Below are positions 18,051 through 36,800 of a stretch of DNA of 64,000 nt, piece by piece. The DNA lies in the NCBI GenBank assembly GCA_051294905.1, contig CM119378.1:19592001-19656000 (forward strand), written 5' to 3'. Under the pieces are notes generated by a model. It saw only the letters and a program-made list of their open reading frames with translations. It searched no databases and was not told the origin of the DNA. Position 1 is the stretch's first letter, and each line of letters begins with the position of its first letter. This stretch comes from Botryllus schlosseri. Lineage: Eukaryota. The position numbers and the translations under genes were made by a program.

Positions 18051-19220
18051 CACGATACATCTCGCGACAACTGTCTGCAACGAACGTGAAACGAGTTCTA
18101 TTTTAGTGATACGTTTATGTTGCTCGCCTGACGCCGCTAAGGAGAATTTTCGAGGTGACCTACTTAGTCGTAATGGAACGGCAAGCAACATAGTCAGTTT
18201 TCCATGTTCGAGGCATAAAACAATCAATTTGAGTTGTACTGCGCGTATGCCCTGTTGCCCTCTGATACAACAGAAAACTCATTTGGGTCACTGTTCGACT
18301 AGTGCAGACTTTGAATACTGGGTGTTAGTCTAATATTGCATGGACACATGCAAAATATTATTGTGCGGATATGCACCGCTAATATATATACTGGGTGTAC
18401 CCGCAGTCTCTCATGTGCTAACAGCGTGATAACCAAACCGATAATGCGCCCTAGTATAATTGCATTGTTCACCTTCCAATTGCATCCGTTGATGACACAC
18501 AATATACAATGTGATACACAAAACACAATGCTATCTATAATGAACTGATAGTATTATAGCATGTCCAAACGACTATGTACTTGTACACGGTACAGTTTCT
18601 ATCTCGGCCCAATGTCCGATGTAAAATTGTTCAATTTTAATCTTCCGTGGTCACTAGTCGGTGTTTACCTCAGATTAACGATTAAAAGAACCCTGTCGAA
18701 TTAATCCAACCCGCGTTCAACATCAAGTATTGTAAACATGAAGGCCTAGACGGGCATTAGGCATGGATCATGCTAATAACAAAATGCATCTGGCGCCTAA
18801 TTAGCTTCTTGTTACTGTGGATTGACGGCAGAATTGTTTAGCTTAGGCTGCGCAGAATCGCCTTCATGCGACAAGTTCGGCGTTTCCGAAACAACAGTTT
18901 GAAGTGTCGAAAATTACAATTTTATTGCACATTTGTCATCGAATTTCCCTAACATCCCGAATTCCTTTCACATCAATTAACCTATTGCTTTAACCAGATT
19001 TATCGACAGCATTCGCGAAATTCGTGATACCGGACAACCATAAGCTGATTTGAAGTAAGTTGGAATGAATTATAATAATCTGTGGTGTAAAAGGCCAACA
19101 ATGGCGATAAGCATCACCTTAATGCACAATAATGATAACATGAATGCGAACTAAACGATCGATGATATCTCAACGATTCCATTTAGTCAAAAGGTAGTCG
19201 GCATAGCATCTCGTTCCAAC

Positions 19221-20383
19221 GGTTGCCGGAGAACCCGTCCCTTGGAGAACCCGTCCCTACCAACTCGGCCCTCGAAGAACCCGGCCCTCGGTGAATTCCT
19301 CGGGAAATTTAGAAATTAAGTGTATTCACAAGTATTAATATGAATTAATAAAGTAATAATGTTATTATCAACTGATTTGTCGGTCTTGTAAGGAGCTCAG
19401 GAGCTCAGGGCATACGTAGGTCACGCAGTTACGGCGTGGGATATTAGGGTTGCCAGAGGTGGGATATTAGGGTTGGTGGAGGTGGGATATTAGGGTTGCC
19501 GGAGGTGGGTTTTAGGGTTGGTGGAGGTGGGATATTATGGTTGCCGGAGGTGGGATATTAGGGTTGGTGGAGGTGGGATATTAGGGTTGACGGAGGTGAG
19601 ATATTAGGGTTGGGGGAAGGGGATATGAGGGTTGGGGGAGGTGGGATATTAGGGTTGCCGGAGGTGGGATATTAGGGTTGCCAGAGGTGGGATATTAGGG
19701 TTGGTGGAGGTGGGATATTAGGGTTGCCGGAGGTGGGATATTAGGGTTGCCGGAGGTGGGATATTAGGGTTGGGGGTTAGGGTTGGTGGAGGTGGGATAT
19801 TAGGGTTGCCGGGGGTGGGATATTAGGGTTCCCGGGGGTGGGATATTAGGGTTGCTGGAGGTGGGATATTAGGGTTGGGGGAGCGGGATATTAGGGTTGG
19901 GGGAGGTGGGATATTAGGGTTGCCGGAGGTGGGATATTAGGGTTGCCGGAGGTGGGATATTAGGGTTGCCGGAGGTGGGATATTAGGGTTGGGGGAGCGG
20001 GATATTAGGGTTGGGGGAAGTGGGATATTAGGGTTGCCGGGGTGGGATATTAGGGTTGCCGGGGTGGGATATTAGGGTTGCCGAAGGTGGGATATTAGGG
20101 TTGCCGGAGGTGGGATATTAGGGTTAGGATATTAGGATTGCCGGTGAATACAAAATTTCCCGAGGGCCGGGTACACATTTAATGCATTTTTAATTCAAAA
20201 TTGTTCGAGGGCCGCATTCACCGAGGTCCAGAGTAGTCGAAAAACACCGTTAATACCACAACAAGTAGACCACGCGTGCTTGATATGCAAAATTTCCCGA
20301 GGGCCGGGTTCTCCAAGGGCCGGGTTCTCCGAGGGCCGAGTTGGTAGGGACGGGTTCTCCAAGGGACGGGTTCTCTGGTAATC
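19221..20383. mobile_element. Foldback-like TIR element (Merlin- or MULE-like ends) carrying a telomere-like minisatellite
   Basis: Arms of ~70-90 bp built from GGAGAACCCGTCCCTT / CCAACTCGGCCCTCG / GAACCCGGCCCTCG units are inverted at the two ends. Flanking direct repeat is GTTCCAAC (19213-19220, 20384-20391); identity extends to 10 bp (TCGTTCCAAC). Confidence 0.9.
19437..20143 (+). repeat. G-rich 23-bp minisatellite GGAGGTGGGATATTAGGGTT(GCC/GGT/GGG), ~30 units
   Basis: Read directly. Nearly every unit contains TTAGGG, and the G/C strand asymmetry is strong. Confidence 0.98.
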
Positions 20384-20759
20384 GTTCCAACAAGCCTGGT
20401 CTCAACTTATAGAAAAAAACGCCTGGTGAACCATACAGTGTCAACAGTAGCCATTTGTTAACAATCAAGTTCAACAAATCACTGCTGTTTGACTTGAGGT
20501 CATACATATGGATGTACCAAGACACGCATATCGCAAGTTCCAGCTGTGATTTATTTTATTGTAAAGCTTACAGTGTAAACGAAGATCGCAATCGCATTAC
20601 CATCGCAATGTGACTGTCAAACTTGACATATCAAACTGGATTTGATGTACAGGAACAATTAGCTTGCGCGAGAAGCTCAAAATGAATTTGGTCGATGCGC
20701 CTGGCGAGACTGATTAAAATACAGTCATCCTGGATTCCTGGGTGCATAACCAGAATAAA

Positions 20760-21249
20760 GGGGATATAGGGTTCAACAACAATGTTACATCGCGGATGAG
20801 CTGCGATGCAATGAACGGAAATAACATGGCAGTGTCCAACACCGTTTATTTTTGGGGCGAGACAGGATCGTCTGCTGTATACCCTGGTTCCGCCAGTGAT
20901 GACGATTACATAACGTCACAATGCTCGCAATTCCAACGAATCGAGGAATCCATGCGTTTAGTATTGTAAGTTGTAACACGGCGCAAAATAACCATTTCTC
21001 CGTTTGCATCATCAAAACACAGCAATGACTTCATCAATCAGACAACTATCCGTTGTACTAGAGCCGGGGTGATTCCCAGTCTACTCCAGACCGTTCCGCC
21101 ACGCAAAGCTCACAATAACACACATTACGTAATCTCCCGAATACCCCGCACTGTTTTTTTTCGGATGGATACTGCGCAGTTGCGAAGGCAAAGTAAAGAA
21201 CGCACCAGCAAAATAGCGCGAATCTAAAAATACACCGGTTACTGACCAA
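20760..21249 (-). pseudogene. Possible decayed secreted/receptor N-terminus (signal peptide plus somatomedin-B-like Cys motif)
   Basis: ORF 21058..21249 reads hydrophobic FRFALFCWCVLYFAFATA then KQCGVFGRLRNVCYCELC (cf. SMB RCG-x(n)-CxCDxxC). Downstream are DPVS and a (C)ARCN-like HPRCN relic across stops. Confidence 0.3.
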
Positions 21250-32306: not shown

Positions 32307-33256
32307 TAATGAATGAAACTAGCCAAACAATTTTTGTAGTTGTTTTAGTCGGTTTTGTTTAAGCGCGTACCAGCGTATGGCGGTTTCTAGGGGTGGTATA
32401 CGAAAGCAGAAATCGTTTCTATACGTCCCTGGGACAAATATCCATAAAAATCAGTGTTTTTGACTCGTTCCTACGTATTGAAATAGCCGCGGAAGAAAAA
32501 TGTTGCGTCAGAAAGTGCCGTTTACCTAATTTTCATCACACTACGGTTAAAATCGGCGAAACACAGTAATTTCGAGTGTGTATAGTTCGTCCAATTCATT
32601 CATTCCAGCTATTGATCAATTCTACTTTACTGAAAATTTTTCGGAAACTATAATTGTATGTCGCCCAAACCAAAGTACGAGGTTTGCTCGGACGTAGCCA
32701 AATACCGGAGCCATCTAGCGATAAGTTGATCACGCGCCTATTCATTAAACATTAGTTTCCGTCAATCATGAGTCAGTTACAGAAACTCCTTCATTTTATC
32801 GACATGTCACCAGCGCATTTCACCGCCATTCTCCCGAACATACAAATCCTCTGTTCGACTGAAACGGCACCTGGTCACGACTTTGAATATACGCCTTCGA
32901 ATGGGAAAGCCGCGCATTACAGTTTCGTGTTGACAATCGCCGGCATTCGTGTCCGAAACCTGAAGAAACTTTGATGAACTTAATGTAATCAAATGATCGG
33001 AAAATAGCGCGGGTTGCGGCCGGGAACATGGCCAGGAATACGTGTACCATTCGTTACTGCGGATTTGCGATGTGTCTTCGATTGCAAATTCAAACTATAT
33101 CCGAGGAGCTACACCTTTTTGATAGTTACAAATGGCCAATGCTCTATACATGGGTCACTAACAGGCGGGCGGCCATCTTGTTTCAGATTTCGGAATATTG
33201 CGTGATTATGTATTTCTACATGCTGGAAATAATTTCAATTTTCAAAGGCTGAACAG

Positions 33257-33874
33257 TAGGGCTGTTCAAAAATAACTTTTTTTCCCGGATTCCAGCCATT
33301 CAATGATTAAATTGTCAGGTTACCCTAAAAAACGCTGCACACCAAATTTGGTTCGATTCTAACAAGTATAGGACTCCGCAGATCCAATTAAACTTTTTAA
33401 TTTATTATGGAAAATTGAAAAAAAAATTTCCAAATTTTTCTGCCAACCCCATGAAATTGTTGAGCTGTCCTCAAAGACGTTGCAAAACAAATTTGAGTCA
33501 ATTCCGACCAGTAGAAGCGGAGTTATGTGATTTTTTCGTTGATAAATCGCGGATTATCCAACGATCACGGATAATCCGAGGATTATCATCGGAAAACTCA
33601 CATAACTCCGCTACTACTGGTCGGAATTGACTCAAATTTGTTTTGCAACGTCTTTGAAGACAGCTCAACAATTTCATGGGGTTGGCAGAAAAATCTGGAA
33701 TTTTTTTTTTTTCAATTTTCCATAATAAATTAAAAATTTTAATTGGATCTGCGGAGTCCTATACTTGTTAGAATCGAACCAAATTTGGTTTGCAGCGTTT
33801 TTTATGGTAACCTGACAATTTAATCAGTGAATGGCTGGAATCCGGGAAAAAAAAGTTATTTTTGAACAGCCCTA
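33257..33874. mobile_element. Almost fully palindromic 618-bp foldback MITE (hAT-type ends)
   Basis: Ends TAGGGCTGTTCAAAAATAAC...GTTATTTTTGAACAGCCCTA with perfect 8-bp TSD CTGAACAG (33249-33256, 33875-33882). The arms pair to within ~9 nt of the centre (loop ~33560-33568). Confidence 0.97.
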
Positions 33875-36800
33875 CTGAACAGGTACAGAATATTCTTCGT
33901 CAATATTTAAATCTTGCGCCTATCAATTTTGAAAGTGGCCCGCTACATATTTTAGGTTGGAGACACCTGCTATACACAGTACTATGTCGTTTCTATAATG
34001 TAGTGGTTCCCAACCTGTGGCGGTCTGTGCCTCAATTTGACCACGAGATCACGTCTTGTAGCATCCGAATGATGTCGGGAGAAAACATAGGCCAACAAAA
34101 GTATCTATGGAAAATGTCCACTAAGGCATGAAAAATACCTCAAAACCTTGCTTTAACAGCCGCAGTGGACAAACCCTATAAACCGTAAATGCATGGTTGG
34201 AACATATTTAGGTGTATTGACCAAGTTGTACTTTCGCACCCATTAGAACGTATGAAAGCGAGTCAAAATCACCTATCCTTATGGATATATATATATCCCA
34301 GAGTGTAGAGGGCTATGTTTACGTGTATAACCTTTTGCGATTCATTAGGGTGGCGCGCGTTAACATAGCCCATTGGTATATTCGACCCATTTACAGCAGG
34401 TGGAATGGGCGTGAAAATAGTGTGATTAAGTACAATAAAGTTCGGATGCTCTGATTGGCTCCATACGCTATGGTGAAAATCTAGTCAATACACCTATGTT
34501 CAACCCATGTATTTACAGTGATGATATGCATACAATGAGGAGGAAGATGACACTACATGGACTTGTAACTCCTCATATTGCCTCGTGGCCCCACTGGGGG
34601 TAGGGAGCACTGTATTGCGTTAAAATTAGGCTCGGTGTTTCACCACGACACGGGATTAATATACAGTGGAAGGCTGCGGTTTTATATAGGTGGAAACTGA
34701 GATGTGTTCAATCCAAACCCGGTTTCGACACGAAAAATAAGACTGCCTAGACTTCTAAAATAGTAGCAAGACATAAGGGCGAACATGCAGTTTCCAGGTG
34801 TTTAGACTAGAACCATACTGTTTAAATATCATTTTATTTCAAATATCTGAGCATCATGCCGTCGAAAATTGAACATTTTACACGGTTCAAGGACGAAAAT
34901 GGGGGTGAACGCTAAGTGCACAAGGATGACATCAGTTTCACAAAGCGTAAATGTGTTTTTCCGTTTCGAACGCAGCATAAACATTGCTCACGAAATGGTG
35001 GGTTTTGGCTACCACCTATCACAATCACGAATGTAGCGCCAACAAAATCTTTTATGCGATATGTATAGATACAGTGCAGATGTTCATTCTCTAGTAAAAT
35101 GCTGACGGTAAGCAGCATAGGTAAGATTTAGGGATGTATACACTTCTCAGAATCTCATCGACTCAACAGCATACCGCGTCATAGACTTGACGCCGTCACG
35201 TAGCTTAATATCTGCAATTGCATGCGGCAGTATATATATTACTTTGCTGTACACGCATGGTCGATATTTGGAAATGTAAAAGTCATATTTTACCTGATAA
35301 CAGGTTGGTTTAAAATTTCAAATCACCATTGAAATTGGTATCGTCTTCTGTTGAAACGCAATATAATACATACAACTATTGAATTTGAGGATATAATTTA
35401 TGCTGAATATGTTAGTTACAGCAGATCGGAGATTATATAGGTTTTGGATAAACAAGTGCACGCAAGATCTACAACCGGATTTGGCGCAGGTATAGCTCTC
35501 AAACACCACCTACAAGACATCGCATATACATCGTCTGTAATAAAACTTATTACAGACGCGTGTTTTGTAAACTGCCGCATCCATATAGGAAGATGAAATC
35601 TGCCGTAGTGAAGTTTTATGAAAACAGGATGGCACTTTGGCTTCTATAAACAGTGAGACACGTACGCACACTCGCACAGTCTCGACTAAAATTTGAGAAG
35701 TTATGCTGACGTAAATTTTACGATTTATATCAATTTGTACTTGATATCAAGCATAATTCATGATCCAAACTGACGATTACGGTATTTCAATTTTTAATTA
35801 ATGCAGTCCGGATGGGTCGGGTGAAAATTTGGTCTAAAGTATTGTCGTCAAATTTAATTAATAACTGACGATAAGACAAAACAATATAATTGTACTTAAT
35901 TGTCACAATACATCAATGACGTAACAATCGAAACACAGTACCGTGTAATTTACATATTGATTCCAAATTTGTCAGTCCTTATCGCAAAACTTTCAATATA
36001 CCGTCTCCGCGGGCAAACTGGTGCAATGCGCAGATATTGCAACCATTAGAAAACGGGCCTTTCCGATATTAACGTAAATAAGTGCTATTATTAGGCTCGG
36101 CGCGTCATCATTGGGACTTTTCATGCTCATTGCTCACACAAACGCGTATTAACTTTAGTATGCTACCAGTGAGCAGGCTGTAACTTGTTTCTAAGTAACT
36201 TGACGTGAATGAAGGTGATAATTACCCAAGTGATCATTATTAATTTTCTTTGCAAATTACAGAATCGTTAGTAAAATTCGCAATAAACAGTTGTAATGAA
36301 AAGGGAACGGTTGTCCATTACACAGAAAAGCAGTGCTACCGTATAGAAAAATGGAATGTTTCGAAACTCGAAAGTGACATTTAACTCAGAGTGCTCTGTT
36401 AGGATCCGGAGTTTAACTGATTACACCTTTGTTCATATTTTTCAGAATATTTAATAATGAACCCTGGTTTGTTGCACTTGCTGAAATTTCTGAAGCATTG
36501 ATCCGTATCCGGAGTATAGATCCGGGTCTGATAGTGTGGAATGAGGTGGCATGTCAGGTGAATGATAAGGAGCCAGATTCTAGTAGTACCAACCGTTGTA
36601 GGGTACTGTTCCTACCACTATGATGCCACACGAAATCTTTTCAAACGAAGGATAAGGAATCAAAGCGAGCGAAGTAACCTTTACTACGTGACAACGTGCG
36701 CGTCGTTTACCAATACTAGTCCGGCACAGTCGAGTCGCTGAGGCTACTCGGGCATACGCAATTGACATAAATGCGGATAAACAACACTAAATAGCCAAGT

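What the first reader, a model, noticed from the sequence alone, without database searches (positions are those of the whole stretch)
19221..20383. DNA transposon-like element carrying a telomere-like TTAGGG minisatellite as cargo
Modular inverted arms and an 8-10-bp flanking duplication enclose ~30 units of a 23-bp repeat containing TTAGGG, the canonical telomere hexamer of many animals. The near-intact ends imply a fairly young insertion. If the array is a family-wide feature, this is a mobile vehicle for interstitial telomere-like sequence, which might recruit telomere-binding proteins, seed chromosome healing or fragility, or use those proteins in transposition (all speculative). GG-starting ends with an 8-9-bp TSD fit Merlin; tandem-built arms with a 9-10-bp TSD fit MULE/Foldback. 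I cannot decide between them.
Basis: partly seen in the sequence, partly recalled or inferred. Interest (0 to 1): 0.8.

Follow-up and report, generated by a model that had tools for sequence, protein, structure and literature searches.

The report
Jumping gene carrying telomere-like repeat array
This is a real, recently inserted, non-coding jumping gene, about 1.16 kb long, that carries some 30 copies of a 23-bp repeat holding a telomere-protein binding motif; repeat-carrying elements of this build are a known kind, and the telomere-like motif is the only unusual part.

Summary
Window 19221-20383 is a 1,163-bp non-autonomous DNA transposon.

- **Arms:** the inverted arms match at 68 of their first 72 nt and are built from 16-bp subrepeats.
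- **Target-site duplication (TSD):** a perfect 10-bp direct repeat flanks the element. The arms align in register only if the duplication is 8 bp.
- **Array:** 31 units of a 23-bp G-rich repeat, with 29 TTAGGG.

Public reads show an allele that lacks exactly the element plus one repeat copy, so the insertion is polymorphic and young. Arm and internal sequences are multi-copy in every individual sampled of this one organism.

Array units differ by about 13% while the TSD is perfect, so the array arrived with the element. Each unit ends in the element's own terminal 11-mer, GGTTGCCGGAG. "Arm-derived repeat" therefore fits better than "captured cargo".

The array holds 28 consensus TRF1 half-sites (YTAGGGTTR) and 17 of the window's 21 G-quadruplex motifs. 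Binding is plausible but untested.

Still open:
- the superfamily (Merlin or MULE/foldback), because no autonomous partner was reachable;
- whether all copies carry the array, for which evidence is only indirect.

Earlier unchecked notes of this scan report similar TTAGGG-array elements elsewhere in this genome.

Verdict: a new variant of the known tandem-repeat-containing MITE/foldback kind, of moderate interest.

The parts
19211..19220 (.). Left copy of the target-site duplication. The direct repeat is 10 bp, TCGTTCCAAC. The in-register TSD would be the last 8 bp, GTTCCAAC, at 19213-19220.
   Evidence: The empty-site joint has 10 nt that fit either side.
19221..19297 (+). Left inverted arm. 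The tip GGTTGCCG is followed by 16-bp subrepeats GGAGAACCCGKCCCTY, the spacer ACCAACTCGGCCCTCG and the inner motif CGGTGAATT.
   Evidence: 68 of 72 nt match the reverse complement of 20312-20383.
19298..19435 (+). Left internal segment. It is AT-rich and non-repetitive within the element. It shares short blocks (TCGGGAAATTT, GTATTCAC) with the reverse complement of the right inner arm.
   Evidence: In one search the summed contig depth here is far above the single-copy flanks, and other copies diverge after 19401 (loose ends).
19436..20140 (+). Minisatellite of 31 units of 23 bp, consensus GGATATTAGGGTTGCCGGAGGTG. The variable block alternates between GCCGGA, GGTGGA and GGGGGA. It holds 29 TTAGGG, 28 YTAGGGTTR and 17 G-quadruplex motifs, and is 49.5% G and 5% C on the + strand.
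20141..20311 (+). Right internal segment and inner arm. CAAAATTTCCCGAGGGCCGGGT occurs twice (20152 and 20283, a 131-bp period), with a third degenerate copy near 20199. Extra 16-bp subrepeats begin at 20297.
   Evidence: I2, I5, I7. In one search a 98-nt contig spanning 20127-20223 has about 35 times the single-copy depth.
20312..20383 (-). Right inverted arm, in register with 19221-19292. Its reverse complement starts GATTACCAGAGAACCC.
20382..20391 (.). Right copy of the 10-bp direct repeat TCGTTCCAAC. The 8-bp TSD GTTCCAAC is at 20384-20391. The first two bases overlap the element end if the TSD is 8 bp.

Best explanation
Window 19221-20383 is a non-autonomous cut-and-paste DNA transposon of MITE/foldback build.

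It encodes no protein. It must be moved in trans by a transposase encoded elsewhere, which recognises the roughly 72-nt arms made of 16-bp subrepeats. That partner is most likely a Merlin-type element, and second most likely a MULE/foldback-type one.

It inserted recently at GTTCCAAC, duplicating 8 bp (possibly 9-10 bp). The insertion still segregates against the empty allele. It belongs to a young multi-copy family found in one organism.

The 23-bp minisatellite was part of the element when it inserted. It is best read as tandemly amplified arm material. Each unit is a 12-nt spacer (GTGGGATATTAG) plus the element's own terminal 11-mer (GGTTGCCGGAG), and the telomere-like TTAG|GGTT straddles the two. 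I infer that the array grows and shrinks by slippage or unequal exchange. I also infer that the canonical family form is a symmetric foldback with inverted arrays, of which this copy keeps one.

As a by-product, every insertion plants about 28 consensus TRF half-sites and a strongly G-skewed block prone to G-quadruplexes. Whether host or element uses them is not shown.
For: Shown directly:
- TIRs, subrepeats, TSD and array.
- Empty-site allele. Run X7 has a 3,245-nt contig at single-copy depth (91) that covers 18700-19210 and 20382-20897 contiguously. Run X1 has a minor contig with the same joint.
- Multi-copy status. Summed contig depth over the arms is about 40-350 times the flank depth in three runs. 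The right 279 nt is held at 0.55-0.86 of exact 31-mers in 20 listed runs of 8 studies, all of organism A.
- No ORF of 60 aa or more lies wholly inside the element, and the longest internal ORF (55 aa) has no protein homologue.
- The array pre-dates the insertion. Units share only 87% mean identity while the TSD is perfect and the TIR core matches 46 of 46.
- Array-like contigs are very abundant in X7, which lacks this insertion.
- The contig spanning array end to right internal segment (20127-20223) has depth 346 against about 10 for single-copy sequence in X2.
- Mirror joint 19299/20167 on opposite strands appears in three DNA runs and in RNA reads.
- The terminal 11-mer equals the 3' part of the unit. 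Only 3 of 4,886 random window 25-mers reach a match of 11.

From the literature:
- Merlin has a terminal 5'-GG, an 8-9 bp TSD, TIRs of 24-462 bp and sometimes internal tandem repeats (PMC8101967).
- MULEs have 8-11 bp TSDs and long TIRs (PMC6446971).
- TRF1 dimers need two YTAGGGTTR motifs at any spacing (PMC3241663).
Against: - No second copy could be read base by base, so the family consensus, the true TSD length and how often the array is present all remain inferred.
- Loose ends after 19401 in other copies read ...ACGGCGCAA where this copy has ...ACGGCGTGGGATATT. Some relatives may therefore lack an array at this junction.
- The right tip starts GA, not GG. With a 10-bp TSD the tips would be out of register by 2 nt.
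- Summed contig depths are not copy numbers, as the tool itself cautions.
- The very high depth over the AT-rich left internal segment may partly reflect low-complexity matches at 85% likeness.
- No autonomous partner was seen.
Confidence: 0.7

Rival explanations
1. One-off local expansion. The transposon family normally has no array, and the 23-bp repeat expanded at this locus only, after insertion.
For: Only one copy could be read. Other copies diverge from this one shortly before the array start (loose ends at 19401). The array sits in one half of the element only.
Against: - Units differ by about 13% and form higher-order patterns, while the TSD is perfect and the insertion is still polymorphic. 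That leaves too little time for 31 diverged units to arise in place.
- Near-identical array contigs are abundant in an individual that lacks this insertion (X7).
- The junction contig 20127-20223 has about 35 times the single-copy depth.
Confidence: 0.1
2. Functional telomere mimic. The family spreads arrays of TRF-binding sites that recruit shelterin-like proteins. These proteins either serve the element (end protection of the excised DNA, or targeting) or affect the host (fragile sites, healing seeds, heterochromatin).
For: - The array holds 28 of the window's 31 exact YTAGGGTTR sites.
- TRF1 needs only two such sites at any spacing or orientation (PMC3241663).
- Related contigs in the same organism contain perfect TTAGGGTTAGGG stretches (loose ends).
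- Unchecked notes of this scan list several other foldback-type elements with TTAGGG-like arrays, and a TRF-family gene, in this genome.
Against: - There are no binding, chromatin or distribution data.
- Only 8 of 23 nt per unit are telomeric.
- Half of the octamer (GGTT) belongs to the element's own terminal motif, so the match may be partly accidental.
- RNA reads over the element are very few and all only partial.
Confidence: 0.12
3. The array is a set of repeated transposase-binding or pseudo-end sites, as in the subterminal repeats of Ac, En/Spm and foldback elements. It raises transposase recruitment or offers alternative ends.
For: Every canonical unit contains the exact left terminal 11-mer GGTTGCCGGAG, and the GCCAGAG unit variant resembles the right tip TTACCAGAG. 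The arms themselves are tandem subrepeats.
Against: - The transposase and its footprint are unknown.
- The array is in direct orientation on one side only.
- The 16-bp arm subrepeat, the likelier binding site, is absent from the array.
Confidence: 0.25
4. Not a transposon. It would be a minisatellite flanked by a locally generated inverted duplication.
For: No transposase and no second copy were found in the window.
Against: There is a precise empty-site allele with one copy of the flanking repeat. The arms are multi-copy in all runs, including a run that lacks this insertion.
Confidence: 0.02

Closest known systems
Tandem-repeat-containing MITEs (DTC84 of Donax trunculus, pearl-type elements of oysters; PMC3879986)
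   Same: Both are non-coding, high-copy elements in which a central array of tandem repeats is flanked by arms holding inverted repeats. Array length is variable.
   Different: DTC84 has up to five core repeats, a microsatellite at one array end and a putative AA target duplication (PMC3879986 abstract). This element has about 31 units of 23 bp, an 8-10 bp TSD, long subrepeat-built TIRs and a telomere-like motif.
Foldback-type non-autonomous elements with tandem repeats in their arms (Tetris of Drosophila virilis, PMC4079207; Drosophila FB by general knowledge)
   Same: The structure is modular, with arms built from tandem repeats. The repeats also exist outside the element as satellite-like arrays, and many rearranged forms occur.
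   Different: Tetris repeats are about 220 bp and lie in both TIRs. Here the unit is 23 bp and G-rich, is present on one side in this copy, and contains the element's terminal 11-mer plus TTAGGGTT.
Merlin superfamily non-autonomous derivatives (PMC8101967)
   Same: The terminal 5'-GG (left end), an in-register 8-bp TSD, a TIR length within 24-462 bp and internal tandem repeats, which are reported in some Merlin families. Unchecked notes of this scan report active Merlins with repeat-filled arms in this genome.
   Different: The right tip reads GA. No DDE_Tnp_IS1595 partner with these termini was seen. A 10-bp TSD cannot be excluded.
Interstitial telomeric sequences (ITS) inserted by telomerase at breaks (PMC2246262)
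   Same: Telomere hexamers at an internal chromosomal site.
   Different: An ITS is a head-to-tail (TTAGGG)n array. Here there is one hexamer per 23-bp unit, carried inside a TIR/TSD-bounded mobile element.

Membership tests
Class II TIR (cut-and-paste) transposon, non-autonomous | Terminal inverted repeats | tested here: met
   The ends match at 68 of 72 nt in register, with a 46-nt perfect core.
Class II TIR (cut-and-paste) transposon, non-autonomous | Target-site duplication, and an empty site with a single copy of it | tested here: met
   A 10-bp direct repeat flanks the element. Contigs in X7 and X1 join 19210 to 20382, and 10 nt fit either side.
Class II TIR (cut-and-paste) transposon, non-autonomous | Multiple dispersed copies | tested here: met
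   Arm depth is about 40-350 times flank depth. Arm and internal 31-mers are held by 20 listed runs, and arm-like contigs are abundant in X7, which lacks this insertion. Individual copies were not read.
Class II TIR (cut-and-paste) transposon, non-autonomous | No transposase of its own, and an autonomous partner sharing the termini | tested here: inconclusive
   There is no internal ORF above 55 aa and no protein homologue. A partner could not be searched for, because the genome is not available to the tools.
Merlin | Conserved terminal 5'-GG (PMC8101967) | tested here: inconclusive
   The left end is GG. The right end is GA with an 8-bp TSD, and AT or TT with 9 or 10 bp.
Merlin | 8- or 9-bp TSD (PMC8101967) | tested here: inconclusive
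   The direct repeat is 10 bp, and only an 8-bp TSD puts the TIRs in register. One copy cannot decide.
Merlin | DDE_Tnp_IS1595 transposase in the autonomous partner | not testable with these tools
   No partner is in the window and no genome-wide search is available.
Mutator-like / Foldback | TSD of 8-11 bp and long TIRs (PMC6446971) | tested here: met
   The TSD is 8-10 bp and the arms are about 72-100 nt of tandem subrepeats. These features are not exclusive to this family.
Mutator-like / Foldback | MULE-type transposase partner | not testable with these tools
   Same limits as for Merlin: no partner in the window and no genome-wide search.
hAT | 8-bp TSD with YARNG-type termini (general knowledge of the family, from memory) | tested here: not met
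   The termini are GGTTG and GATTA. For contrast, the element at 33257-33874 in this window does start TAGGGCTG and has an 8-bp TSD.
Interstitial telomeric sequence | Head-to-tail (TTAGGG)n | tested here: not met
   No TTAGGGTTAGGG occurs in the window, and there is one hexamer per 23-bp unit.
pearl/DTC84-type tandem-repeat MITE | Central tandem repeats between arms with short inverted repeats | tested here: met
pearl/DTC84-type tandem-repeat MITE | Putative AA target duplication and a microsatellite at one array end (PMC3879986) | tested here: not met
   The TSD is GTTCCAAC or TCGTTCCAAC, and no microsatellite is present.

The most novel reading that the evidence does not exclude
A group of young foldback/MITE families in this chordate-like genome acts as a mobile carrier of arrays of consensus TRF-binding half-sites and G-quadruplex motifs. 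These arrays are bound by the host's telobox proteins, so transposition seeds telomere-protein platforms at internal chromosomal sites. The platforms could affect fragility, healing or silencing, or the element could use the proteins for its own transposition.
Probability: 0.12. Interest if true: 0.8.

Novelty: new variant of a known kind. Interest (0 to 1): 0.42.

Why it matters
If the array is family-wide and bound by telomere proteins, transposition would be a ready mechanism for scattering telomere-protein binding blocks and G-quadruplex-prone DNA through a genome. That bears on where interstitial telomere-like sequences and fragile sites come from.

Even without this, the locus is a clean, segregating insertion of a repeat-carrying foldback/MITE whose repeat unit embeds the element's own terminal motif. 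That makes it a useful case for studying how transposon arms give rise to minisatellites.

As it stands, most of the element is ordinary transposon biology.

Tried and rejected
- **Reading other copies through proteins.** The longest ORF inside the element (55 aa) has no relative in the protein collection, so no encoding contigs could be fetched.
- **Scanning metagenome contigs.** Exact scans for the arm subrepeat pair and for a two-unit array pattern each gave 0 matches. The prokaryote genome and viral collections were not scanned because they cannot hold this animal's repeats.
- **Searching papers for the sequences.** Strings of the unit and the arm gave only chance hits.
- **Naming the organism from the window.**
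  - No Pfam-supported ORF was found, there was no Rfam match, and the longest ORF had no look-alike in the protein atlas.
  - Run names are coded.
  - My guess of amphioxus rests on 19 assembled pieces, 41% GC and PMC10013865. It stays unverified; earlier notes hint only at a relative of sea squirts and amphioxus.
- **Looking for relatives in the window.** Blastn with word size 7 found nothing outside the element.
- **Considering the hairpin element at 33257-33874 as a relative.** I rejected this, because its ends are different and hAT-like.
- **Finding a published telomere-like array inside a TIR transposon.** None surfaced. This is weak evidence of absence, because Repbase and Dfam are not searchable here.
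- **Folding the element as single-stranded DNA.** The fold only restates the arm pairing.

Full report
**1. What is there**

Window 19221-20383 (1,163 bp) is bounded by inverted arms. The repeat finder reports arms 19210-19295 and 20309-20394 as 90% complementary over 86 nt. [quoted passage not shown] This includes a perfect 46-nt core.

The arms are built from a 16-bp subrepeat, GGAGAACCCGKCCCTY. All 7 matches in the 64-kb window lie inside the element, against 0.02 expected by chance.

A 10-bp direct repeat, TCGTTCCAAC, lies at 19211-19220 and 20382-20391.

The arms enclose four segments:
- an AT-rich segment, 19298-19435;
- the minisatellite, 19436-20140;
- a right internal segment, 20141-20311, that repeats the inner-arm motif CAAAATTTCCCGAGGGCCGGGT at 20152 and 20283.

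The array has 31 units. Most are 23 bp, with consensus GGATATTAGGGTTGCCGGAGGTG. There are 29 TTAGGG, and a variable block (GCCGGA, GGTGGA or GGGGGA) gives a partial 46-bp periodicity.

**2. It is a true, recent insertion**

I laid public runs of the same coded organism on 18700-20900. Run X7 contains a 3,245-nt contig at that run's single-copy depth of 91. It covers 18700-19210 and 20382-20897 contiguously. The joint skips 1,171 nt, and 10 nt fit either side of it. This allele therefore has one copy of TCGTTCCAAC and no element.

Run X1 is the best holder and possibly the assembled sample. It has the same joint in a minor contig (depth 6.7, against flanks of about 16-25), and its flank contigs stop exactly at the element's borders. 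That pattern fits a heterozygous insertion.

A precise empty site, a perfect TSD and a perfect TIR core together show a young, segregating transposon insertion. They exclude a locally generated palindrome.

**3. TSD length and superfamily**

The empty site cannot tell 8 bp from 10 bp. Only an 8-bp TSD (GTTCCAAC) puts the two tips in register: GGTTGCCGGAGAACCC against GATTACCAGAGAACCC, with three G/A differences. With 10 bp, the right tip would be 2 nt short.

- Merlin elements have a terminal 5'-GG, an 8-9 bp TSD, TIRs of 24-462 bp and sometimes internal tandem repeats (PMC8101967).
- MULEs have 8-11 bp TSDs and long TIRs (PMC6446971).

The element fits both imperfectly. hAT-type termini are not met. 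For contrast, a hAT-like hairpin element with TAGGGCTG ends and an 8-bp TSD sits at 33257-33874.

Unchecked notes of this scan report active Merlin families with repeat-filled arms in this genome. These are a lead and were not tested here.

I put Merlin at about 45-50%, MULE/foldback at about 30% and another superfamily at about 20%. No autonomous partner lies in the window, which has no ORF with a Pfam family.

**4. Family status**

The window holds no second copy. In the laid runs, summed contig depth jumps at the element borders:
- from about 20 to 4,800-87,000 in X1;
- from about 91 to 32,000-87,000 in X7;
- from about 10 to 430-700 in X2, over the arms and non-array internal parts.

The tool warns that such sums are not copy numbers. 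Even so, X7 lacks this insertion, so all of its signal comes from other copies.

A second index search used only the array end, right internal segment and right arm (20105-20383). It found 0.55-0.86 of the exact 31-mers in 20 listed runs of 8 studies, all of organism A, including small RNA-type data sets.

The family is therefore multi-copy, young and near-identical between copies. At this stringency it was seen in one species only. Raw RNA reads of one bulk run gave only 69 partial matches, so there is no sign of strong transcription of this copy.

**5. Did the array travel with the element?**

Indirect evidence says yes:
- Units share only 87% mean pairwise identity and show higher-order patterns, while the TSD is perfect and the insertion is still polymorphic. 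Thirty-one diverged units cannot have arisen in place in that time.
- Array-like contigs are extremely abundant in X7, which lacks the insertion.
- A 98-nt contig of X2 spans the last array unit into the right internal segment (20127-20223). Its depth is 346, against about 10 for single-copy DNA.
- Contigs in three DNA runs, and some RNA reads, join 19299 to 20167 on opposite strands. In other copies, then, the left arm continues into the mirror image of the right inner arm, the part that leads into the array. This points to symmetric, head-to-head forms.

Against this, loose ends after 19401 in other copies read ...ACGGCGCAA where this copy enters the array. Some relatives may therefore differ at this junction. 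I could not read any other copy end to end.

**6. What the array is**

The left terminal 11 nt of the element, GGTTGCCGGAG, is exactly the 3' part of the canonical unit. Among 4,886 random 25-mers of the window, only 3 reach a match of 11 nt to the unit. The unit variant GCCAGAG resembles the right tip TTACCAGAG.

A unit is thus a 12-nt spacer (GTGGGATATTAG) plus the terminal motif. The telomere-like octamer TTAG|GGTT straddles the two.

This argues that the array is amplified arm or end material, as in foldback elements and Tetris (PMC4079207), and not captured telomeric DNA. It also allows the idea that the units serve as repeated transposase-binding or pseudo-end sites.

**7. The telomere aspect**

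The array is not an interstitial telomeric sequence, because no TTAGGGTTAGGG exists in the window. It does hold 28 of the window's 31 exact YTAGGGTTR sites and 17 of its 21 G-quadruplex motifs. It is 49.5% G and 5% C on the + strand.

Human TRF1 dimers need only two YTAGGGTTR motifs, with no constraint on spacing or orientation (PMC3241663). Binding by a TRF homologue is therefore plausible at the motif level. Nothing here tests it.

Related contigs of the organism contain perfect TTAGGGTTAGGG stretches (loose ends). Unchecked notes of this scan list at least seven other elements of 0.8-2.5 kb with TTAGGG-like arrays in or between inverted arms, and a TRF-family gene, elsewhere in this genome. 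The scan has therefore met this theme before on other DNA. I could not verify those notes.

**8. Organism**

The organism's name is coded and the window has no recognisable gene. Nineteen assembled pieces, 41% GC, high polymorphism (the X7 haplotype differs by about 6% in the flanks) and abundant young MITEs would fit an amphioxus. PMC10013865 reports 19 chromosomes in B. floridae, TTAGGG telomeres and about 6.7% MITEs. This remains a guess. Earlier notes only hint at a relative of sea squirts and amphioxus.

**9. Comparison and verdict**

Non-autonomous DNA transposons with internal or arm tandem repeats are well known: DTC84 and pearl (PMC3879986), Tetris (PMC4079207), and Merlin families with internal tandem repeats (PMC8101967).

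Two things are particular here: the unit embeds the element's own end motif, and it forms a consensus TRF half-site. I found no paper describing a TIR transposon with such an array. Repbase and Dfam could not be consulted, and a catalogued entry is quite possible.

I rate it a new variant of a known kind. Interest is moderate, and would rise sharply only if TRF binding and family-wide arrays are shown.

Noticed in passing
window 33257-33874: A 618-bp element that is almost one long hairpin. Its termini are TAGGGCTG...CAGCCCTA, with an 8-bp TSD CTGAACAG at 33249-33256 and 33875-33882. The ends are hAT-like and unrelated to the element studied.
   Followed up: partly
window 1-64000: The whole 64-kb window has no ORF with a Pfam family and no Rfam match. 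CpG observed/expected is 1.12, which suggests an unmethylated, gene-poor or intronic stretch.
   Followed up: partly
window 18700-19210 and 20382-20897: In run X7 the haplotype lacking the insertion differs from the window by about 6% in substitutions, plus several indels of 5-13 bp. This is very high within-species polymorphism.
   Followed up: no
window 20105-20383: Very small RNA-type data sets (12-24 million letters) hold 55-77% of the exact 31-mers of the right arm and internal segment. Family copies may therefore be transcribed or yield small RNAs. A bulk RNA-seq run gave only partial reads.
   Followed up: partly
window 19292-19365: The AT-rich left internal segment has the highest summed contig depth of the non-array parts in run X1, about 18 times that of the arm tips. 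It may belong to a still more abundant family, or it may attract low-complexity matches.
   Followed up: no
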